Shown here one piece after another: positions 715 through 24,650 of a DNA stretch of 27,562 nt (within the stretch, counting starts at the first letter, position 1; each line of letters opens with the position of its first letter). The stretch is taken from assembly GCF_006345805.1 (NCBI RefSeq), contig NW_021834737.1, forward strand, positions 1-27,562, given 5' to 3'. Origin of the DNA: Octopus sinensis. Its lineage: Eukaryota. The notes under the pieces were generated by a model, which was not told the DNA's origin, made no database searches, and was given only the letters and a program-made list of their open reading frames with translations. A program made the translations under genes and the position numbers.

Positions 715-1334
715 ATATGTATAAGCATACATACATACATACATACGTACATACATACATACATACATACATAAATACATACATGCATACGTACATACAT
801 ACGTACATACATACACACATACATACATACGTACGTACATACATACATACATACATACATACATACATGCATACGTACATACATACGTACATACATACAC
901 ACATACAAACATACGTACGTACATACATACATACATACATACATAAATACATACATGCATACGTACATACATACGTACACACATACACACATACATACAT
1001 ACGTACGTACATACATACATACATACATACATACATACATACATACATACATACACACATACATACATACATACATGCATACATATATACATACATACAT
1101 ACATAGATACATACATACACACATACATACATTTACATACATACATACATATATACATACATACATACATATATTAACATACATACATACATACATACAT
1201 ACATACATACATACATACATACATACATACATACACATATACATACATACATACAAACATATATACATACATACATACATATACTACATACATACATACA
1301 AATACATACATACAACATACCATACATACACATA

Positions 1335-1368
<34 letters not shown>

Positions 1369-1423
1369 CATTTACATACAGACATATATACATACATACA
1401 TACATACATGCATACATACTATA

Positions 1424-1462
<39 letters not shown>

Positions 1463-2052
1463 CATACATACAGACATATATACATACATACATATATACA
1501 TACATACAACATACATATATACACACATACATATACTACATACATACATTACATATACACACATACATACATACATAATATATACATACATACATACATA
1601 CATATATACATACATACATATATACATACATACATACATATATACACACATACATGCATACATTACATACATAATACATACATACATACATACATACATA
1701 CATACATACAGACATATATACATACATACATACATACATAAACAACTATAAATACATAACATACATACATATATACATACATACACCATATATACATACA
1801 TAATATATAATATATACATACATATATACACATACATATATACATATATACATACATACATTTATACACACATACATATATACATACATACATACATATA
1901 TACATACATACATATATACATACATACATACATATATACACACATATATATATACATACATACATACATATATACACACATACATACATACATACATATA
2001 TACATACATACATACATACATATATACATACATACATACATACATACACATA

Positions 2053-2086
<34 letters not shown>

Positions 2087-2135
2087 CATACATACATACA
2101 TATATACATACATACATACATACATGTGTATGTAT
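715..2135. repeat. Compound (TACA)n/(TA)n microsatellite, ~1.4 kb
   Basis: Directly visible. It accounts for the MYVC/HTYI ORFs between 480 and 2216. Confidence 0.95.
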
Positions 2136-2179: not shown

Positions 2180-2596
2180 GTGTGGCTGTGTGGTAAGAAG
2201 CTTGCTTCCCAACCACATGGTTCCGGGTTCAGTCTCACTGCGCGGCACCTTGGGTAAGTGACTTCTGCTATAGACTCGGGCCGACCACAGCCTTGTGACT
2301 GGATTTCGTATAGGAAAGCTGAAAGAAGCCTGTTGTGTGTATGTGTGTATATATATGCATGTATGTATGTATGTATGTATGTATTTGTGTGGTGCGTCTG
2401 CCCTCGCCCACCCCATCATCACTTGACAACCGATGCTGGTGTGTTAACGTCCCCATAATTTTGCGGCTCGGCAAAAGAGACCGATTGAATAAGTACTAGG
2501 CTTACAAAGAATAAGTCCTGGGATCGATTTGTTCGACTAAAGGCGGTGCTCCAGCATGGCCACAGTCAAATGACTCTGCAATAACTAAAAGAATGT
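2180..2596 (+). mobile_element. tRNA-derived SINE, family 1, near full length, with an internal TG/TA microsatellite
   Basis: A-box-like TGGCTGTGTGGTAAG and B-box-like GGTTCAGTC. The body matches copies at 18100-18492, 18977-19153, 22753-22909 and 24440-24650. It resembles octopus tRNA-derived SINEs from memory; I did not assign a named family. Confidence 0.85.
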
Positions 2597-10001: not shown

Positions 10002-10892
10002 AAGTTTTAAAATGGTACCCGGATAGACAAATTTTAAAACGGTACCCGGATAGACAAGTTTTAAAATGGTACCCGGATAGACAAATTTTAAAATGGCACG
10101 CGGATAGACAACTTTGAAAATGGTACCCGGACAGACAAGTTTTAAAATGGCACGCGGATAGACAATTTTTAAAATGGTACCCGGATAGACAAGTTTTAAA
10201 ATGGTACCCGGATAGACAATTTTTAAAATGGTACCCGGATAGACAAGTTTTAAAATGGTACCCGGATAGACAAGTTTTAAAATGGTACCCGGATAGACAA
10301 ATTTTAAAATGGCACGCGGATAGACAACTTTGAAAATGGTACCCGGACAGACAAGTTTTAAAATGGTACCCGGATAGACAAGTTTTAAAATGGTACCCGG
10401 ATAGACAATTTTTAAAATGGTACCCGGATAGACAAGTTTTAAAATGGTACCCGGATAGACAAGTTTTAAAATGGTACCCGGATAGACAAATTTTAAAATG
10501 GCACGCGGATAGACAACTTTGAAAATGGTACCCGGACAGACAAGTTTTAAAATGGTACCCGGATAGACAAGTTTTAAAATGGCACGCGGATAGACAAGTT
10601 TTAAAATGGTACCCGGATAGACAAATTTTAAAATGGCACGCGGATAGACAACTTTGAAAATGGTACCCGGACAGACAAGTTTTAAAATGGTACCCGGATA
10701 GACAAGTTTTAAAATGGCACGCGGATAGACAACTTTGAAAATGGTACCCGGACAGACAAGTTTTAAAATGGTACCCGGATAGACAAGTTTTAAAATGGCA
10801 CGCGGATAGACAACTTTGAAAATGGTACGCGGACAGACAAGTTTTAAAATGGTACCCGGACAGACAAGTTTTAAAATGGTACCCGGATAGAC
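10002..10892. repeat. Minisatellite, 33 copies of exactly 27 bp (consensus AAGTTTTAAAATGGTACCCGGATAGAC)
   Basis: Counted unit by unit with no indels. A few recurring sequence variants are present. Confidence 0.97.
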
Positions 10893-11199
10893 ATCAGGTG
10901 CAGTAAATACCAGTATCTAAGTTAGATAGCCACTCAGGGATTCTTGTTCTGCTAGAAAAGCAGAAACATTTCCCTTGCATCGCACTCTACTTCATAGAAA
11001 ACGGTAGGGTCCATTTGATAACTTATTCTCACTACAATATGCTGAGAGGAAAGAATATTAAAGGTGTGGTGGTTACGCTTTGATGGATAGAATGTCTTTT
11101 GATGGTAGGTCGGATCAGGGTAGAATCGGGGCTAAACAACAATGTTCAGCACAATAACAAAAAAACAGAAGTAATACCAGCTCAAGCGCCAGAACTGTC

Positions 11200-14048: not shown

Positions 14049-14672
14049 CTGAGCAGATGTAAAGATCTTGAAATAGGAATTAGCAAATGTTGTACCTGAA
14101 GACTAAGATAATACCTGTTGTCATAGGTGCCCTAGGAATGATAGCAAAAGGGGCTGATTGCTACCAGATCAGATACAAAAACCCCAAAATGGCAGAATTC
14201 AAATGATAGTGCTCATGGGAACTGCTCATATCCTATGCAAAATACTTTCTATGTAATCTCAAGTTTTAAAACAAACTCATAATTTTCTTATGGTTTCTTA
14301 AACATTCCCTAGGACAACATTATTTACAAAACCAAATATATCATTTTGGCCGCCATGGGTTTTGCAGTAAATCACTAAATCATCCATAACTTTTGTATTA
14401 TCCTCTCAAATTACACCAAAATCTCAGACAATAACAAATAATATCGTATTTATTGCCTGTGATAATTATAGAATATAAAACAACTTTGATAAAAAAATTA
14501 TACCTACTTTTCTGACGAAAACAATGCCGTTCTGAACATTTTGGTCGCAACACTATGGTTGTGATGCCTGTTCCTGGTGCACCCTTATTAGACAGGTAGT
14601 CATGATGGGTATACTGGGTTTCGTATAATTTACCCCAGTGTCACTTTGATGGAATGCATTGCTCTCTCACTC
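14044..14672 (+). mobile_element. R4/Dong-type retrotransposon 3' fragment, copy A
   Basis: Near-identical to 14754-15385 but with frameshifting indels. Flanked by (AAT)n. Confidence 0.7.
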
Positions 14673-14748
<76 letters not shown>

Positions 14749-14753
14749 TAATT

Positions 14754-15385
14754 AAAAAACTGAGCAGATGTAAAGATCTTGAAATAGGAATTAGCAAAAT
14801 GTGGTACCTGAAGACTAAGATAATACCTGTTGTCATAGGTGCCCTAGGAATGATAGCAAAAGGGGCTGATTGCTACCAAGATCAGATACCAGAAAACCCC
14901 AAAATGGCAGAAATTCAAATGATAGTGCTCATGGGAACTGCTCATATCCTATGCAAAATACTTTCTATGTAATCTCAAGTTTTAAAACAAACTCATAATT
15001 TTCTTATGGTTTCTTAAACATTCCCTAGGACAACATTATTTACAAAACCAAATATATCATTTTGGCTGCCATGGGTTTTGCAAGTAAATCACTAAATCAT
15101 CCAAACTTTTGTCTTATCTTCAAATTACACCAAAATCTCAGACAATAACAAATAATATCGTATTTATTTCCTGTGATATTATAGAATATAAAACAACTTT
15201 GATAAAAAAAATTATAACACTACTTCTGACGAAAACAATGCCGTTCTGAACATTTGGTCGCAACACTATGGTTGTGATGCCTGTTCCTGGTGCACCCTTA
15301 TTAGACAGGTAGTCATGATGGGTATACTGGGTTTCGTATAATTTACCCCAGTGTCACTTTGATGGAATGCATTGCTCTCTCACTC
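14754..15385 (+). mobile_element. R4/Dong-type retrotransposon 3' fragment, copy B
   Basis: KLSRCKDLEIGISKMWYLKTKIIPVVIGALGMIAKG...IQMIVLMGTAHILCKILSM* (ORF 14646..14972), followed by a ~410-nt 3' UTR and (AAT)n. Confidence 0.75.
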
Positions 15386-15435
<50 letters not shown>

Positions 15436-15464
15436 CAATAATAATAATGATAATAATAATAATA

Positions 15465-15933
15465 AAATGGACTTGTTTATTAATTGACATGAGTATTCTC
15501 TGTGATCACAATATAGCGGCGAAAGAATTTGACAAGATTAGTAAATATAAAGACCTACTAATGGAAATTGAAAAAAATGTGGCATCTCAAGGCAACTACA
15601 GTACCAGTGATTGTAGGATCTCTAGGAATGATAAAAAAAGGTACTGAAACCTATTTGAAAATGATTCCAGGCTTACCATCCCTACAGGAAGTACAAAAAA
15701 TCGTATTACCTGGAACGGCTCATGTACTGAGAAGAGCACTATCGTTGTGAAAATAACATCAATCCATGAATTTATTTAGTTATTAATTTTTGAATACATA
15801 TTTTATCTGTGAATTTGCGCGTGTAATCTGGGAATGCATACAATGCCCTTCTCTGCCCTAGGTGTATGGAAAACACTCGGTGAGAAACGGGAGAAAATTT
15901 GAAGAAAGAAGGTTAAAACATGATATAAAATTA

Positions 15934-18976: not shown

Positions 18977-19153
18977 TGTCTCTCTGTGTTTATCCTCTCA
19001 CCATCGCTTGACAACCCATATTAGTCTGTTTACGTCCCCGTAACTTAGCGGTTCACAAACGATATCGATAGAATAAGTACTAGGCTTACAAAGATTAAGT
19101 CCTCGGGTCGATTTCTCCGAGTAAAGCTGGTGCTCCAGCATGGCCGCAGTCAC
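18977..19153 (+). mobile_element. SINE family 1, 3' half
   Basis: CATCGCTTGACAACC...CCCCGTAACTTAGCGGTTC...GGTGCTCCAGCATGGCCGCAGTC. Confidence 0.8.
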
Positions 19154-20290: not shown

Positions 20291-20946
20291 TTACAGGAAA
20301 ATTAGTAAATTAGTTGCAATTAATGAAGGTTTCGTTTCTTGGTTTATAAAAGAAATGGCAATAAATGGCTGTTATACGTCTTAAAATGGTTCCAAAGCGC
20401 TGGAGAAAATAAATTTGAAAACGTAATTATTTTAACACACTCTCATCGAAGAAAATGTAAAGCTATGGCTATGTCGATAAGTAGTTCGCCTAGGGATTTG
20501 ACTGATAAAAACTGAAAGAACCTCAGCTTATATAATATGTACTGCACTTCAAACAGTGTATTGTATATATTATATATATGTACACACACACACACACACA
20601 CTTATATATATATGTGCCTGTCCTTGTATGCATGCATACGCTTACATATATCTATCAATCTATGTATGTGTGCATATATGTATGTATGTATGTATGTATG
20701 TATATATATATATATATATATATAATAGAAATATTAAAATAACTAAGTCTCTCTAAAAGAGAACAGCGGCAGCGTTCCCGGAAAATAATAGTTATCGCCA
20801 TACTAATATGGCATTCTTATAAAAATAAGAAAAAAGCTGTCCGCTTATTAGCTCCATGAGGCCATCGCCTTAAGTTAGCTATTTGATACACAAACTGTAT
20901 CCATATAACCTTCGAACAAGGGAGGTCAGTCGCTCCACACTACTTG

Positions 20947-21004
20947 ACCGGCAGCTACAGACGCGTTTCGGGGTATTGCCCCTTTTCAATGCAGCGTAGC
21001 CAGC
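20947..21004 (-). ncRNA. Type I hammerhead ribozyme, U3-A8 variant, intact
   Basis: GCUGGC-UAC-GCUGCA-UUGAAAA-GGGG-CAAUA-CCCC-GAAA-CGCG-UC-UGUAGC-U-GCCGGU. Predicted cleavage between 20960 and 20959. Confidence 0.8.
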
Positions 21005-21203
21005 CAGTAGGTGTCGCTTCCGACAATCTCTGTTCGATGGTTTTATTTACCTAGTTTCGGTGGAATACATCCACTTGTTTTCAATAATAGAAATATTAAA
21101 ATAACTAAGTCTCTCTAAAAGAGAACAGCGGCAGCGTTCCCGGAAAATAATAGTTATCGCCAAACTAATATGGCATTCTTATAAAAATAAGAAAAAAGCT
21201 CCA

Positions 21204-21245
21204 TGAAAAGGGGCAATACCCCGAAACGCGTCTGTAGCTGCCGGT
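21204..21245 (+). ncRNA. 5'-truncated hammerhead at the inversion junction, probably inactive in cis
   Basis: Begins at UGAAAA and lacks U3 and the 5' strand of stem I. Stem II, GAAACGCGUC and the 3' strand of stem I are intact. Confidence 0.7.
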
Positions 21246-21546
21246 CAAGTAGTGTGGAGCGACTGACCTCCCTTGTTCGAAGGTTATATGGATACAGTTT
21301 GTGTATCAAATAGCTAACTTAAGGCGATGGCCTCATGGAGCTAATAAGCGGACAGCTTTTTTCTTATTTTTATAGAATGCCATATTAGTATGGCGATAAC
21401 TATTATTTTCCGGAACGCTGCCGCTGTTCTCTTTTAGAGAGACTTAGTTATTTTAATATTCTATTATTGAAAACAAGTGGATGTATTCCACCGAAACTAG
21501 GTAAATAAAACCATCGAACAGAGATTGTCGGAAGCGACACCTACTG

Positions 21547-21604
21547 GCTGGCTACGCTGCATTGAAAAGTGGCAATACCCCGAAACGCGTCTGTAGCTGC
21601 CGGT
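21547..21604 (+). ncRNA. Type I hammerhead ribozyme, U3-A8 variant, one stem II mismatch
   Basis: Same motif, with stem II GUGG/CCCC (T at 21570). Predicted cleavage after C21591. Confidence 0.75.
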
Positions 21605-21907
21605 CAAGTAGTGTGGAGCGACTGACCTCCCTTGTTCGAAGGTTATATGGATACAGTTTGTGTATCAAATAGCTAACTTAAGGCGATGGCCTCATGGAGC
21701 TAATAAGCGGACAGCTTTTTTCTTATTTTTATAAGAATGCCATATTAGTATGGGCGATAACTATTATTTTCCGGGAACGCTGCCGCTGTTCTCTTTTAGA
21801 GAGACTTAGTTATTTTTATATTTCTATTATTGAAAACAAGTGGATGTATTCCACCGAAACTAGGTAAATAAAACATCGAACAGAGATTGTCGGAAGCGAC
21901 ACTACTG

Positions 21908-21965
21908 GCTGGCTACGCTGCATTGAAAAGGGGCAATACCCCGAAACGCGTCTGTAGCTGCCGGT
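21908..21965 (+). ncRNA. Type I hammerhead ribozyme, U3-A8 variant, intact
   Basis: Stem I 21917-21922/21953-21958, core 21923-21929, stem II 21930-21942, GAAA 21943-21946. Predicted cleavage after C21952. Confidence 0.8.
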
Positions 21966-22151
21966 CAAGTAGTGTGGAGCGACTGACCTCCCCTGTTCGA
22001 AGGTTATATGGATACAGTTTGTGTATCAAATAGCTAACTTAAGGCGATGGCCTCATGGAGCTAATAAGCGGACAGCTTTTTCTTATTTTTATAAGAATGC
22101 CATGCCATATAGTATGGCGATAACTATTATATATATATATATCTGTCTGTT

Positions 22152-22195
<44 letters not shown>

Positions 22196-22348
22196 CCTGT
22201 CCTTGTGTATCTATATTGTTTATAAGACTATATGTATTTATATTACATTTATGAATTTACTTAATAGCTTTATGTGGGAGTTAACCCTGGAGTTAAACCA
22301 ATTAAAGCCTGGATCACTCCATTCTCCTTGGTGGTGATTATTTACTTA

Positions 22349-22660: not shown

Positions 22661-22752
22661 GTTACTACGTTACATGTACCACGTGTTTGCGTTGTTGTTT
22701 TTTCTTGTTCTTTTATCTTTGTTTTTCTTTTTTGACTTATTATATATATATA

Positions 22753-22909
22753 GACGAAGGAGCGGCTGTGTGGTAAGTAGCTTCCTTACCAATCACTTGG
22801 TCTCAAGTTCAGTCCCACTGCAGGGTACCTTGGACAAAGTGTCTTCTGCTATAGCCTCAAAGCCTTGTGAGTAGATTTGGTAGACGGAAACTGAAAGATA
22901 CCCGTCGTG
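22753..22909 (+). mobile_element. SINE family 1, 5' half
   Basis: GGCTGTGTGGTAAGTAGCTT...AGTTCAGTCCCACTGC...GGAAACTGAAAGA. It stops where the internal microsatellite normally begins. Confidence 0.8.
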
Positions 22910-22977
22910 ACCGCGTGTGTACCGTTGGCGATTTTTTTTCCTCCGTCTTCCCTCCTCTGGATCTTTCCTTTTCCTAT

Positions 22978-23012
22978 GTTTCTGACGAAGGGCTCCGCTC
23001 GAAACATAAAAC
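22978..23012 (+). ncRNA. Minimal hammerhead-like motif, Penelope type, probably decayed
   Basis: GUUU-CUGACGA-A-GGGC-UCC-GCUC-GAAA-C-A-U-A-AAAC: canonical core, 4-bp stem I, 4-bp stem II. Stem III reads ACAU rather than the palindrome ACGU. Confidence 0.55.
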
Positions 23013-23111
23013 CCTCTTTCTTCCCTTCCTTCCTGAGCATCCAATAATACTATTTTTGTTCCACGTCCTCGCGTTGTTGTGTTTTCTCTTTGTGTTTTCA
23101 TGTTTGGATTA

Positions 23112-23142
<31 letters not shown>

Positions 23143-23215
23143 GTAGGTCCCGGGTTGATTCGGGGTTAACCACAGTAAATAAGGTACTCAATACATATAG
23201 AGTAAAATTAATTTA

Positions 23216-24331
23216 TTATATAGAAGGAGCTTCTACAGGACTAGAACTGTTTCATTCAAGAGAAATCTTCAGGAAGCTAGTTAACAAAATTGTATTGGCA
23301 TTTATACATTAGGCAGGTTTAAAGGGGTGTTGGTGGGGGACTTTTTTGGGGGTAGGCATAGCGCAAAATATCATACTTGGGGGAGTGGTCAAGAGTCAGT
23401 GTTAATTAGATATAAGAATAAATAAAAAAATAAAAAATATATAAAAAAATAATATACAAATATATATAAAAAAAGGGAATAGAGTTTTAGGTAAATAAGG
23501 AGATTCTCACTTATACCTATGCACATAGTAACATATATACACACACATCAAACATATATACCTATACTACACACATACGTACACACACACATATATACAT
23601 AATATACACTTACACATACATATACATACCTACACATCACATATATGTTTACATACACACACTCACATGCATACACGTATACACACATGTATATACACAC
23701 ACGACCACACATAGATATACACGCATGTGCTGTGGGTGCATATGTGTGTGTGGATATGTGTGTGTATGCGTGTATGTGAGTATGTGTGTGTATTGTATAT
23801 ATATTTTTTCTGTGTGTATATGTATGTGTGGTCGTGTGTGTATATATACATGTGTGTATACGTGTATGCATGTGAGTGTGTGTATGTATACATATATGTG
23901 TATGTGTAGGTATGTATATGTATGTGTAAGTGTATATATATATGTAATATATGTGTGTGTGTACGTATGTGTGTATGTTATGTATATATGTGTTGTATGT
24001 GTGTGTATATATGTATACATATGTGCATAGGTATAAGTGAGAATCTCCTTATTTACCTAAAACTCTATTCCCTTTTTTTTATATATTTTTATATATTTTT
24101 TATATATTTTTTTATTTTTTTATTTATCTTCTATCTAATTTAACACTGACTCCTTGACCACTCCCCCAAGTATGATATTTTGCGCTATGCCTACCCCCAA
24201 AAAGTCCCCCACCAACACCCCTTTAAACCTGCCTAAATGTATAAATGCCAATACAATTCTTGTTTAACTAGCTTCCTGAAGATTTCTCTTGAATGAAACA
24301 GTTCTAGTCCTGTAGAAGCTCCTTCTATATA
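23216..24331. repeat. Long inverted repeat, ~510-bp arms and ~85-bp spacer
   Basis: 23216-23725 is the reverse complement of 23811-24331, including the irregular microsatellite part, with scattered small indels. Confidence 0.9.
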
Positions 24332-24368
24332 TAAATTATATATTATATATATATGCATATGTATATAT

Positions 24369-24439: not shown

Positions 24440-24650
24440 GTGAGTCTGTGTTTGTCCCCCCACCCCAACATCGTTTGACAACCAATGCTAGTGTTTACAT
24501 CCCCGTGAAATAGCGGTTCGGCAAAAGAAACCGATGGAATAAGTACCAGGTTTACAAAGAATAAGTCCTGGGGTAGATTTGCTCGAATAAAGGCGGTGCC
24601 CCAGCACGGCCGCAGTCAAATGAGTGAAAGAAGTAAAAGACAAGAAAAGA
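24440..24650 (+). mobile_element. SINE family 1, 3' half
   Basis: GTGTTTGTCCCC...CATCGTTTGACAACC...GCGGTTCGGCAAAAG...GGCGGTGCCCCAGCACGGCCGCAGTCAAATGA. Confidence 0.8.

What the first reader, a model, noticed from the sequence alone, without database searches (positions are those of the whole stretch)
20722..22130. Candidate cephalopod non-LTR retrozyme: ~362-bp tandem units, each with a hammerhead ribozyme
Seen: a non-coding ~362-bp unit is present in about four copies' worth of sequence, each with a hammerhead motif at the same position. Predicted GUC cleavage sites on the + strand fall at 21232, 21591 and 21952, 359 and 361 nt apart. The unit has several further perfect hairpins (GAUACA/UGUAUC, GCCAUA/UAUGGC, GUGGA/UCCAC, UGUCG-GAAG-CGACA). 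Established: metazoan non-LTR retrozymes are short tandem repeats with type I hammerheads whose transcripts self-cleave into monomers and circularise, and are thought to be mobilised by Penelope-like elements. Inference: this is such a family in an octopus-like genome and should yield ~360-nt linear or circular RNAs. I do not know of a description of this family but cannot check that.
Basis: partly seen in the sequence, partly recalled or inferred. Interest (0 to 1): 0.92.

Follow-up and report, generated by a model that had tools for sequence, protein, structure and literature searches.

The report
Octopus hammerhead-ribozyme repeat element (retrozyme)
A 1.4-kb block of 362-bp repeats in an octopus genome carries a self-cleaving "hammerhead" RNA motif and looks like a retrozyme, a small parasitic element already known from mussels, corals and salamanders, so it is a new example of a known kind, not a new kind of thing.

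Summary
The repeat is real, but it is not four units head to tail. Positions 20722-21203 hold 1.33 units in the minus orientation and 21204-22130 hold 2.56 units in the plus orientation. They are joined head-to-head and lie inside a (TA)n microsatellite. Each unit carries a type I hammerhead-like motif: helix I 6 bp, helix II 4 bp, helix III A-U capped by the palindrome CGCG, cleavage site GUC. Rfam does not detect it. A covariance model built only from four experimentally validated retrozyme ribozymes (coral, mussel, axolotl) does, at 32 bits and E about 3e-7. A generic descriptor gives about 0.001 or fewer chance hits per window. The core reads UUGAAAA instead of CUGANGA. This is the U3-A8 covariant of the C3-G8 pair, already reported in Schistosoma Penelope-like elements. 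Only two motifs are intact (cleavage after 21952 on +; after the complement of 20960 on -). The 21591 copy has a helix II mismatch, and the 21232 copy is cut by the inversion junction. The unit is non-coding, 41.6% GC and strongly self-paired (z = -6.4). The partial tandem, inverted truncated arm and (TA)n target match the insertion signature of Penelope-like elements. The host is an octopus. No related copies could be fetched and no RNA data were available, so cleavage and circular RNA remain untested. Verdict: new member of a known kind, moderate interest.

The parts
20700..20726 (.). Left flank: (TA)n run that closes a (TATG)n/(TA)n compound microsatellite. Presumed target DNA.
   Evidence: Sequence read; TRF row 20661-20723; junction printout.
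20722..21203 (-). Inverted arm: 1.33 units in the minus orientation. M1 is 20722-20959 (unit positions 1-238). M2 is 20960-21203 (unit positions about 122-362, with a 15-nt deletion between AGCT repeats next to the junction). Its sense-strand 3' end points outward (left) and ends in ...CUAUUAU followed by (AU)n.
   Evidence: Inverted repeats I1-I5; blastn of the unit against the window; copy alignment; junctions.
20954..20995 (-). Intact hammerhead-like motif on the minus strand. Predicted cleavage after C17, the complement of 20960, that is between 20960 and 20959.
   Evidence: Descriptor hit; model R1 32.0 bits, E=2.6e-7.
21198..21238 (+). Head-to-head junction of the two arms (about 21200-21206, TGA microhomology) overlapping a truncated hammerhead remnant with GUC ending at 21232. 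Core nucleotide 3 is missing. The inverted arm supplies GCUCCA by accident as a pseudo helix I strand with one mismatch.
   Evidence: R1 24.3 bits with a deletion at model position 7.
21204..22130 (+). Partial tandem: 2.56 head-to-tail units on the + strand (29-nt P0, 359-nt P1, 361-nt P2, 178-nt P3). The sense 3' end points outward (right) and ends in ...CUAUUAU followed by (AU)n.
   Evidence: TRF period 361, 2.6 copies, 97% matches.
21556..21597 (+). Hammerhead-like motif with a G-to-U change at position 10.2, giving a U.C mismatch in helix II. Cleavage is predicted after 21591.
   Evidence: Copy alignment; R1 24.9 bits with the mispair flagged. It was not found by the strict descriptor.
21917..21958 (+). 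Intact hammerhead-like motif: GCUGCA UUGAAAA GGGG CAAUA CCCC GAAA CGCG UC|UGUAGC. Cleavage is predicted after 21952.
   Evidence: Descriptor hit; R1 32.0 bits, E=2.6e-7; helices I and II appear in the MFE of the 76-nt junction-spanning RNA.
21592..21952 (+). The only unit bounded by two complete ribozymes. Predicted 361-nt monomer RNA, 41.6% GC, 61% of bases paired as a circle.
   Evidence: MFE -115.3 kcal/mol, z=-6.4, 0/100 shuffles as stable; circular fold.
22131..22143 (.). Right flank: (TA)n run followed by TCTGTCTGTTTGTC(TC)n. Presumed other half of the target microsatellite.
   Evidence: Sequence read; TRF row 22154-22190.

Best explanation
The block 20722-22130 is one integrated copy of a non-autonomous, hammerhead-bearing retroelement of the metazoan non-LTR retrozyme type, in an octopus genome.

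Shown from the sequence:
- A 362-nt non-coding unit carries a type I hammerhead-like motif with the architecture of validated animal retrozyme ribozymes. Helix I has 6 bp, then a UAC/U internal loop, then a long distal stem. Helix II has 4 bp. Helix III is a single A-U pair (plus C-G) capped so that ACGCGU is a palindrome. The cleavage site is GUC.
- The core has U3 and A8 where the consensus has C3 and G8. This keeps the 3-8 Watson-Crick pair.
- The monomer is predicted to fold into a compact structure in which its two ends pair.
- The DNA is arranged as a partial tandem of 2.56 units preceded by an inverted, 5'-truncated 1.33-unit arm.
- Both outer ends fall on the only two CTATTAT sites of the unit and abut (TA)n.

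Inferred:
- Family members are transcribed through two or more units.
- Neighbouring ribozymes pair through the palindromic helix III into a double hammerhead and cut after C17, releasing 362-nt RNAs with 5'-OH and 2',3'-cyclic phosphate ends.
- A tRNA ligase (RtcB type) closes these RNAs into circles.
- A Penelope-like element (PLE) reverse transcriptase/GIY-YIG endonuclease nicks a (TA)n tract.
- cDNA synthesis is primed at internal UAUUAU sites of the RNA.
- The enzyme copies round the circle, or along an uncleaved multimer, more than once. Priming from the second DNA strand produces the inverted arm.

This particular locus is probably a recent progeny copy. Units differ by about 0.3% substitutions plus single-base homopolymer indels. 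At best it could release one monomer, 21592-21952.
For: - Motif recognised independently. A covariance model built only from the coral, mussel and two axolotl ribozymes printed in the supplement of PMC7229834 gives 32.0 bits, E=2.6e-7 for the two intact copies. It gives 24-25 bits for the two damaged copies. Unrelated background scores 9.6 bits or less.
- Chance is excluded. The generic descriptor has an expectation of about 0.0003-0.001 per window.
- All 13 pairs, including the 3-8 pair as U-A, form in a registered alignment with the validated ribozymes. 98.5% of cells are paired, and 0/500 shuffles reach that.
- Architecture matches the literature. Canonical metazoan type I hammerheads have helix I 6 bp, helix II 4 bp, and helix III 1-2 bp with a 2-4-nt palindromic loop, and work as dimers. 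The U3-A8 covariation was found in about 1,300 motifs of Schistosoma mansoni related to the Cercyon PLE (PMC4209133).
- Co-folding two copies forms the intermolecular ACGCGU helix: -51.9 versus 2 x -22.9 kcal/mol.
- Unit properties fit. 362 bp lies within the 150-450 bp range and 41.6% GC is below 50%. There is no ORF over 55 codons in the consensus and no Pfam hit in the window. The fold is self-paired with z=-6.4 (criteria in PMC7229834).
- Insertion signature fits. PLE insertions are 5'-truncated partial tandems, often with an inverted 5'-truncated copy at the 5' end, and prefer (TA)n (PMC8557442). Here the anatomy is exactly that. CTATTAT occurs only at unit positions 169 and 232, and both outer ends sit on these sites.
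- A second, unrelated hammerhead-bearing element 1.1 kb downstream has the same head-to-head inverted layout next to (TA)n.
- The host is an octopus. Octopus vulgaris carries Penelope-like elements (PMC13282606).
Against: - No Rfam hammerhead model reports the motif, even at E<=10 on an 86-nt slice.
- Two of the classically invariant core positions (C3, G8) differ. No cleavage data exist for this sequence, and PLE-type hammerheads tested in vitro cleave poorly.
- Only one locus is available. No other genomic copy could be retrieved, so neither family status, nor conservation of the core relative to the rest of the unit, nor covariation within the family could be tested.
- The copies within the array are too similar to be informative.
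- No reverse transcriptase or GIY-YIG ORF lies in the window.
- The link to PLE enzymes rests on resemblance of the insertion anatomy. LINE enzymes also produce twin-primed inversions.
- My model R1 has only four training sequences and a shortened calibration, so its E-values are rough.
Confidence: 0.8

Rival explanations
1. A dead relic. The unit descends from a hammerhead-bearing element, but the U3/A8 core is catalytically inert. The block is then just a young, decaying insertion or minisatellite that makes no processed or circular RNA.
For: Rfam models fail. Two invariant core positions are changed. Two of the four motifs at the locus are visibly damaged. Related PLE hammerheads cleave weakly in vitro.
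Against: The two core changes are exactly the pair that restores Watson-Crick pairing between positions 3 and 8. Two independent random hits would rarely do that. The same covariant is frequent in Schistosoma PLE motifs. Every other conserved nucleotide and all helices are intact in two copies. Units differ by only about 0.3% substitutions, so the insertion is young.
Confidence: 0.25
2. Not an independent retrozyme family but a fragment of an autonomous Penelope-like element, namely tandemised pseudo-LTR (terminal repeat) sequence.
For: PLE pseudo-LTRs carry hammerheads. Vertebrate retrozymes are sequence-related to the pseudo-LTRs of PLEs (bioRxiv 10.64898/2026.07.22.740005). The insertion anatomy is PLE-like.
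Against: The repeat period is 359-362 bp with no intervening coding sequence, whereas PLE partial tandems repeat at element length, 3.4-4.4 kb for Naiads. No RT or GIY-YIG ORF lies anywhere in the 27.5-kb window. The ribozyme has the canonical 6/4 helix sizes of retrozymes. PLE min-hammerheads instead have helix I of 4-5 bp and helix II of 7-8 bp.
Confidence: 0.12
3. An ordinary tandem and inverted duplication (satellite DNA formed by replication slippage or recombination, or an assembly fold-back artefact) in which the hammerhead-like motif is coincidental.
For: The window is extremely rich in micro- and minisatellites. Most differences between units are 1-nt homopolymer indels typical of long-read assemblies. 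Inverted duplications can be assembly artefacts.
Against: The motif's chance expectation is about 0.001 or less per window, and it scores 32 bits with a model trained on other phyla. The junction is not a perfect palindrome: the sequence to the right of the junction is not the reverse complement of the sequence to its left. The two arms end at different unit positions (175 and 238) that share the heptamer CTATTAT. A fold-back or unequal crossing-over does not predict that.
Confidence: 0.04
4. The functional output is double-stranded RNA. Read-through of the inverted arms gives a long hairpin (171 nt or more of perfect stem with a 215-nt loop) that feeds small-RNA silencing of the element family.
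For: Inverted repeat I3 (20818-20988 versus 21204-21374) is 171 nt, 100% complementary, with 215 nt between the arms. Longer arms pair in other registers.
Against: This is a by-product of the insertion anatomy and does not explain the unit or its ribozyme. No expression data are available. It is compatible with the main explanation and is not an alternative to it.
Confidence: 0.15

Closest known systems
Mytilus galloprovincialis (mussel) non-LTR retrozymes (Cervera & de la Pena 2020, PMC7229834)
   Same: Both hosts are molluscs. Both have tandem repeats of 350-390 bp with one type I hammerhead per unit. Helix sizes are 6/4 bp. Helix III is A-U capped by a CG-palindrome (mussel GAAA-CGCGCG-UC|UGGCGU, octopus GAAA-CGCG-UC|UGUAGC). 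Both are low in GC and have a highly self-paired monomer.
   Different: The mussel core is canonical CUGAUGA and the octopus core is UUGAAAA (U3-A8). I saw no sequence similarity outside the ribozyme by eye, and no alignment was run. The mussel element has shown self-cleavage and abundant circular RNA, whereas nothing is tested for octopus. The mussel genome holds about 5000 motifs, and the octopus copy number is unknown.
Axolotl/newt retrozymes (satellite 2 type; HHR_Amex1/Amex2)
   Same: Helix III is a single base pair capped by a palindromic tetraloop, so the ribozyme is expected to work as a dimer of neighbouring units. Monomers are 330-350 nt. Loop 2 is similar (CAAAAA/CACUA versus CAAUA).
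   Different: The host is a vertebrate, the core is canonical, copy numbers are enormous, and activity and circular RNAs are demonstrated.
U3-A8 hammerhead variants found in Schistosoma mansoni through the Cercyon Penelope-like element (Cervera & de la Pena 2014, PMC4209133)
   Same: The same covariation of the core 3-8 pair, U-A instead of C-G.
   Different: Those are minimal hammerheads with helix II of 7-8 bp, helix I of 4-5 bp and no helix III loop, and they mostly occur as single motifs. The octopus motif has the canonical 6/4 architecture with loop 3 and sits in a 362-bp tandem unit.
Penelope-like element insertions (Craig et al. 2021, PMC8557442)
   Same: The DNA-level anatomy matches: 5'-truncated partial tandem, an inverted 5'-truncated copy at the 5' side, and a (TA)n microsatellite target with no recognisable target-site duplication.
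   Different: There is no RT/GIY-YIG ORF, and the repeat period is 362 bp, not several kb. The octopus element would be a passenger of such enzymes, not a PLE.
Plant LTR retrozymes and hammerhead viroids (Avsunviroidae)
   Same: Small non-coding RNA with a hammerhead, processing of multimers to monomers, and circularisation. A stable non-catalytic fold competes with the ribozyme fold.
   Different: The plant elements have type III hammerheads, LTRs, PBS/PPT and 4-bp target duplications. Viroids have ribozymes in both polarities and no DNA stage. Here there is one polarity only and a genomic DNA copy.

Membership tests
Metazoan non-LTR retrozyme (Cervera & de la Pena 2020) | Short tandem genomic repeats of about 150-450 bp | tested here: met
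   Consensus 362 bp. 2.56 units lie head-to-tail on + (TRF) and 1.33 units are inverted.
Metazoan non-LTR retrozyme (Cervera & de la Pena 2020) | A type I hammerhead in every repeat (the criterion for an 'active' element in bioRxiv 10.64898/2026.07.22.740005) | tested here: inconclusive
   Four motifs lie at the same unit position. Two are intact (32 bits), one has a helix II mismatch and one is truncated by the junction. All carry U3-A8 instead of C3-G8.
Metazoan non-LTR retrozyme (Cervera & de la Pena 2020) | Low GC (<50%), no LTR, non-coding | tested here: met
   GC is 41.6%. The longest stop-free frame of the consensus is 55 codons. No Pfam domains are found in the window's ORFs. There are no terminal direct repeats other than the units themselves. 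PBS/PPT motifs were not searched specifically.
Metazoan non-LTR retrozyme (Cervera & de la Pena 2020) | Monomer RNA predicted to be highly self-paired | tested here: met
   MFE -115.3 kcal/mol, z=-6.4. 61% of bases are paired as a circle.
Metazoan non-LTR retrozyme (Cervera & de la Pena 2020) | Self-cleavage of transcripts; monomeric linear and circular RNAs in tissues | not testable with these tools
   No transcriptome or wet-lab data are available. Only folding predictions were made.
Metazoan non-LTR retrozyme (Cervera & de la Pena 2020) | Multi-copy family dispersed in the genome; co-occurrence with autonomous PLEs | not testable with these tools
   There is no other copy in the window and no cephalopod genome in the collections. 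The literature reports PLEs in Octopus vulgaris. No PLE ORF lies in the window.
Hammerhead ribozyme, type I | Three helices around the core; U4 G5 A6 A9 G12 A13 A14, A15.1-U16.1, H17 not G, G10.1-C11.1; helix I open | tested here: met
   The descriptor hit shows all these positions. The structure-registered alignment shows 13/13 pairs.
Hammerhead ribozyme, type I | C3 and G8 of the CUGANGA box (forming the tertiary C3-G8 pair) | tested here: not met
   The sequence is UUGAAAA, with U3 and A8. The pair itself is kept as U-A, a natural covariant reported in PMC4209133. Whether this copy is active is unknown.
Rfam Hammerhead_1 / hammerhead models | Score at or above the family's gathering threshold | tested here: not met
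   There is no match at gathering and none at E<=10 on 1.7 kb or on 86 nt.
Penelope-like element (autonomous) | ORF with reverse transcriptase and GIY-YIG endonuclease between pseudo-LTRs | tested here: not met
   There is no such ORF in the array or anywhere in the window.
Plant LTR retrozyme | Type III hammerheads in LTRs, PBS, PPT, 4-bp target-site duplication | tested here: not met
   The ribozyme is type I, with helices II and III capped and helix I open. There are no LTRs. The flanks are (TA)n with no discernible duplication.

The most novel reading that the evidence does not exclude
The junctions of this locus are a direct footprint of how retrozymes move. Both arms start at internal UAUUAU sites of the RNA, not at the ribozyme-generated 3' end. 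Both run through the cleavage/ligation junction, three times in the right arm and once in the left. They meet head-to-head inside a (TA)n tract. This is what twin-primed, rolling-circle reverse transcription of a circular retrozyme RNA by a microsatellite-targeting Penelope-type enzyme would leave behind. If so, this is locus-level evidence for the so-far hypothetical PLE mobilisation of animal retrozymes. It would come from a cephalopod family whose canonical-architecture ribozyme works with a U3-A8 core.
Probability: 0.3. Interest if true: 0.6.

Novelty: new member of a known kind. Interest (0 to 1): 0.42.

Why it matters
Retrozymes and their abundant circular RNAs are established in cnidarians, bivalves, amphibians and other animals. 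I found no description for cephalopods. A recent detailed repeat annotation of Octopus vulgaris does not mention ribozymes. A cephalopod family would extend the known range. It would give octopus RNA biology, already unusual for its heavy RNA editing and SINE/LINE activity, a further class of small circular RNA to look for. It would also explain one class of 'unknown' tandem repeat.

Two details are of specialist interest. First, the ribozyme has the canonical retrozyme architecture but a U3-A8 core. That makes a natural test case for the C3-G8 tertiary pair, and it shows why standard Rfam scans miss such elements. Second, the insertion anatomy (partial tandem, inverted truncated arm, (TA)n target, priming at internal UAUUAU sites) ties a retrozyme copy to the integration style of Penelope-like elements. 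That link has so far been argued only from co-occurrence and sequence relatedness.

Tried and rejected
- Rfam scans of the window at gathering threshold, of 20600-22300 at E<=10 and of 21895-21980 at E<=10 found no hammerhead or other ribozyme family. They returned only microsatellite-driven miRNA-like noise.
- I searched public DNA collections for related copies with a degenerate hammerhead pattern. The metagenome scan gave one hit, L001, which I rejected as chance because it has no helix II pairing and a C3.A8 mismatch. Viral contigs gave none and prokaryotic genomes gave none.
- I tried an indirect route through gene calls on assemblies. The 55-codon antisense frame of the unit has no relative among 5.8 billion proteins. 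The Octopus bimaculoides proteins found are not in the gene-position index, so no octopus contigs could be fetched.
- Coding potential is rejected. The frames are short and unconserved and have no Pfam match.
- tRNA or tmRNA genes: none.
- A hammerhead on the opposite polarity of the unit: none.
- A fold-back assembly artefact is rejected, because the junction is not a perfect palindrome and the arms end at different unit positions.
- MAFFT alignment of the octopus motif with the validated ribozymes misaligned the 3' half. I replaced it with an N-padded, structure-registered alignment. Its pair counts therefore lean towards the structure.
- I wanted to read Przybilski & Hammann 2007 on tolerance to C3-G8 exchanges, but the paper is not held. 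Only its title is cited.
Full report
OBSERVATION

Tandem Repeats Finder reports a 361-bp period at 21204-22130, with 2.6 copies and 97% matches. The stretch before it, 20722-21203, is not a further direct copy. It is the reverse complement of the unit. For example, 20798-21092 is complementary to 21459-21753 over 295 nt, and blastn of one unit against the window shows the same.

In sense orientation the pieces are as follows:
- M1: 20959 down to 20722, unit positions 1-238.
- M2: 21203 down to 20960, unit positions about 122-362.
- P0: 21204-21232, unit positions 334-362.
- P1: 21233-21591, 359 nt.
- P2: 21592-21952, 361 nt.
- P3: 21953-22130, unit positions 1-175.

The consensus is 362 nt, and the block holds 3.9 units' worth of sequence (1409 bp). 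The unit occurs nowhere else in the window.

THE HAMMERHEAD MOTIF

On the sense strand the motif reads GCUGCA-UUGAAAA-GGGG-CAAUA-CCCC-GAAA-CGCG-UC|UGUAGC.

- Helix I is 6 bp (GCUGCA/UGUAGC). It continues beyond a UAC/U internal loop into a long distal stem that closes the rest of the unit, so the motif is type I.
- Helix II is 4 bp with a G10.1-C11.1 pair.
- Helix III is A15.1-U16.1 plus C-G, capped so that ACGCGU is a perfect palindrome.
- H17 is C, within a GUC triplet.

Rfam does not report any hammerhead at gathering score, at E<=10 on 1.7 kb, or on an 86-nt slice. I therefore tested the motif in three independent ways.

(a) A generic type I descriptor that allows the 3-8 pair to be C-G or U-A finds the two intact copies. 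It gave 0/300, then 1/4000 whole-window and 3/20000 local dinucleotide shuffles. That is an expectation of about 0.0003-0.001 per window.

(b) I built a covariance model only from the four ribozymes whose self-cleavage was shown experimentally. They are printed in the supplement of Cervera & de la Pena 2020 (coral Amil224, mussel Mg353, axolotl Ax353 and Ax330). Run over the whole window with filters off, it scores as follows:
- 20954-20995 (-) and 21917-21958 (+): 32.0 bits, E=2.6e-7.
- 21556-21597: 24.9 bits.
- 21198-21238: 24.3 bits.
- Unrelated background: 9.6 bits or less.

(c) In a structure-registered alignment with those four ribozymes the octopus sequence forms all 13 pairs. Overall 98.5% of cells are paired, and 0/500 shuffles reach that. 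Slid controls give 30-44%. I set the register myself, so this count leans towards the structure.

THE CORE

The core is UUGAAAA, not CUGANGA. Positions 3 and 8 form a Watson-Crick pair in the active fold (summarised in PMC3884650). Here both have changed so that the pair is kept as U-A. Cervera & de la Pena 2014 found exactly this covariation, 'U3-A8 instead of C3-G8', in Schistosoma mansoni through the Cercyon PLE, and retrieved about 1,300 motifs with it.

The same paper describes the canonical metazoan type I hammerhead. Helix I is 6 bp, helix II is 4 bp, and helix III is 1-2 bp capped by a 2-4-nt palindromic loop, which makes the single motif unstable and favours an active dimer. That is the octopus architecture.

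Co-folding two copies forms the intermolecular ACGCGU helix: -51.9 versus 2 x -22.9 kcal/mol. The 76-nt RNA spanning a unit junction has helices I and II in its minimum-energy fold.

The mussel ribozyme is the closest in detail: GAAA-CGCGCG-UC|UGGCGU versus GAAA-CGCG-UC|UGUAGC.

Whether the U3-A8 version cleaves is not known. PLE-type motifs tested in vitro were weak.

STATE OF THE FOUR MOTIFS

Two are intact: the one cleaving after 21952 on +, and the one cleaving after the complement of 20960 on -. The 21591 copy has G10.2 changed to U, giving a U.C mispair in helix II. The 21232 copy is cut by the inversion junction. It lacks nucleotide 3, and its 'helix I' strand GCUCCA is supplied by the inverted arm by accident. 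Hence only 21592-21952 is bounded by two complete ribozymes.

THE UNIT

- GC content is 41.6%.
- The longest stop-free frames of the consensus are 55 codons (individual copies reach 69). No Pfam domain is found in any window ORF. The antisense frame has no relative among 5.8 billion proteins.
- The 361-nt monomer folds at -115.3 kcal/mol, z=-6.4, with 0/100 shuffles as stable. The antisense strand folds at -101, z=-4.4.
- The first 23 nt pair with nt about 300-325, which brings the ends together. 61% of bases are paired as a circle.

These are the sequence-level criteria given for metazoan non-LTR retrozymes: 150-450 bp repeats, a type I hammerhead, GC below 50%, no LTR/PBS/PPT, and a highly self-paired circle. 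Mussel units are 350-390 bp.

INSERTION ANATOMY

The sense strands of the two arms diverge from a central junction at about 21200-21206. The junction shows TGA microhomology and a 15-nt deletion between AGCT repeats in M2. The RNA-sense 3' ends therefore point outward.

Both outer ends abut (TA)n. On the left this is ...UUUCUAUUAU followed by (AU)n, and on the right ...AACUAUUAU followed by (AU)n. CTATTAT occurs exactly twice in the 362-nt consensus, at positions 169 and 232, and the two ends fall on precisely these two sites. Given one end, the chance that the other falls on such a site is about 2/362.

Neither arm starts at the ribozyme-made 3' end. The right arm crosses the cleavage junction three times and the left arm once. 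The template was therefore a circle or an uncleaved multimer.

Units differ by about 0.3% substitutions plus private single-base homopolymer indels. This indicates a young insertion, and possibly some assembly error.

Craig et al. [quoted passage not shown] The octopus block has all three features. Neither the 2020 retrozyme paper nor the 2026 preprint on retrozyme origins mentions inverted arms or microsatellite targets for retrozymes.

A fold-back artefact is unlikely, because the junction is not a perfect palindrome and the arms end at different unit positions.

NEIGHBOURHOOD

The window is microsatellite-rich, non-coding octopus DNA. A transposon fragment at 14646-14972 hits only Octopus bimaculoides proteins, at 74-82% identity. 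Three copies of a tRNA-derived SINE are present.

Two further hammerhead-like motifs lie just downstream.
- Motif B, 22978-23012 (+): GUUU-CUGACGA-a-GGGC-ucc-GCUC-GAAA-CA-UA|AAAC. It has a canonical core and the extra nucleotide before helix II that is typical of PLE min-hammerheads.
- Motif C occurs twice in opposite orientation, at 23228-23278 (-) and 24270-24320 (+). It scores 18.1 bits, E about 0.003, and has core CUGAAGA, helix I of 6 bp and helix III of 4 bp.

Motif C sits 25 nt from the outer ends of two 300-nt arms that are 95% identical. The arms are again head-to-head, and the outer right end abuts (TA)n.

B and C lie between the head (22754-22908) and the body (24440-24640) of one SINE copy. 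In the other two copies the head and body are separated only by a short microsatellite. B and C are therefore nested insertions into that microsatellite.

Hammerhead-bearing elements that insert at TA-rich microsatellites with inverted arms are thus recurrent here. This supports reading the 362-bp array the same way. No RT/GIY-YIG ORF is in the window. PLEs, including recently active ones, are annotated in Octopus vulgaris.

WHAT COULD NOT BE DONE

No cephalopod genome or transcriptome is reachable with these tools. I therefore could not test copy number, conservation of the core relative to the rest of the unit, covariation within the family, or expression, and cleavage and circularisation cannot be tested by computation at all.

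VERDICT

On sequence evidence the block is a retrozyme-type element, a new member of a known kind, in an octopus. It has a documented but uncommon core covariant and an informative PLE-like insertion anatomy.

My confidences are:
- 0.8 that it is a hammerhead-bearing retrozyme-type insertion.
- About 0.55-0.6 that the ribozyme is active, and then probably as a dimer.
- About 0.3 that the junctions really record rolling-circle, twin-primed reverse transcription by a PLE enzyme.

Interest is moderate at 0.42. Retrozymes are already shown in molluscs, so the finding is an expected extension of a known pattern and not a surprise.

Noticed in passing
window 22978-23012 (+), within 22909-23116: A solitary hammerhead-like motif with a canonical C3-G8 core: GUUU CUGACGA a GGGC ucc GCUC GAAA CA UA|AAAC. 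It has the extra nucleotide before helix II that is typical of PLE min-hammerheads. Its 15.2-16.2 positions are not palindromic; ACAU could be a decayed ACGU, but that is a guess. The descriptor's chance expectation is about 0.001 per window. It lies in a 208-bp segment ending at (TA)13, and a weakly similar 'tail' (76% over about 50 nt) sits at 22675-22721 before another (TA)n.
   Followed up: partly
window 23203-24345; motifs at 23228-23278 (-) and 24270-24320 (+): A third hammerhead-like motif: AGCUUC CUGAAGA UUUC ucuu GAAU GAAA CAG-8nt-CUG UA|GAAGCU (18.1 bits with the retrozyme-trained model). It is present once near each outer end of a head-to-head inverted repeat. The arms 23209-23507 and 24040-24345 are 95% identical, with microsatellite in the middle, and the right end abuts (TA)n. 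This is the same layout as the 362-bp array and may be the 3' ends of a Penelope-like element.
   Followed up: partly
window 22754-22908 (head) and 24440-24640 (body): One copy of a tRNA-derived octopus SINE is split by about 1.5 kb. The split carries the two hammerhead-like elements above, inserted into the SINE's internal (TG/TA)n microsatellite. Intact copies are at 2184-2592 (+) and 18490-18110 (-), and a further body fragment is at 18983-19152.
   Followed up: partly
window 14646-14972 and 15372-15647 (+): Two fragments of a retrotransposon-like ORF tail (…KIIPVVIGALG…), each directly preceded by an (AAT)26-27 microsatellite. The first hits only Octopus bimaculoides uncharacterised proteins at 74-82% identity, which identifies the host lineage. 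There is no Pfam domain.
   Followed up: partly
window 10002-10893: A minisatellite of 33 copies of a 27-bp unit, AAGTTTTAAAATGGTACCCGGATAGAC, at 90% matches with no indels.
   Followed up: no
window 726-2125 and 29-373: A very long (CATA)n tract of about 350 copies, and a 124-bp purine-rich repeat of 2.8 copies. Overall, more than 80 tandem-repeat rows fall in 27.5 kb, and long (AAT)n, (ACC)n and (TA)n tracts occur throughout.
   Followed up: no
window 20658-20728 (+): Rfam mir-297, mir-3149 and mir-1277 give sub-threshold matches (up to 56.7 bits against a gathering score of 90) on the (TATG)n/(TA)n microsatellite that flanks the array. These are low-complexity artefacts, not miRNA genes.
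   Followed up: yes
L001 (metagenome contig PJEL010041813.1) 1-900: The chance hit from the metagenome scan lies at the edge of an unrelated eukaryote-like tandem repeat of about 240-300 bp ('aatcgccacaaac…'). No hammerhead could be drawn there.
   Followed up: partly
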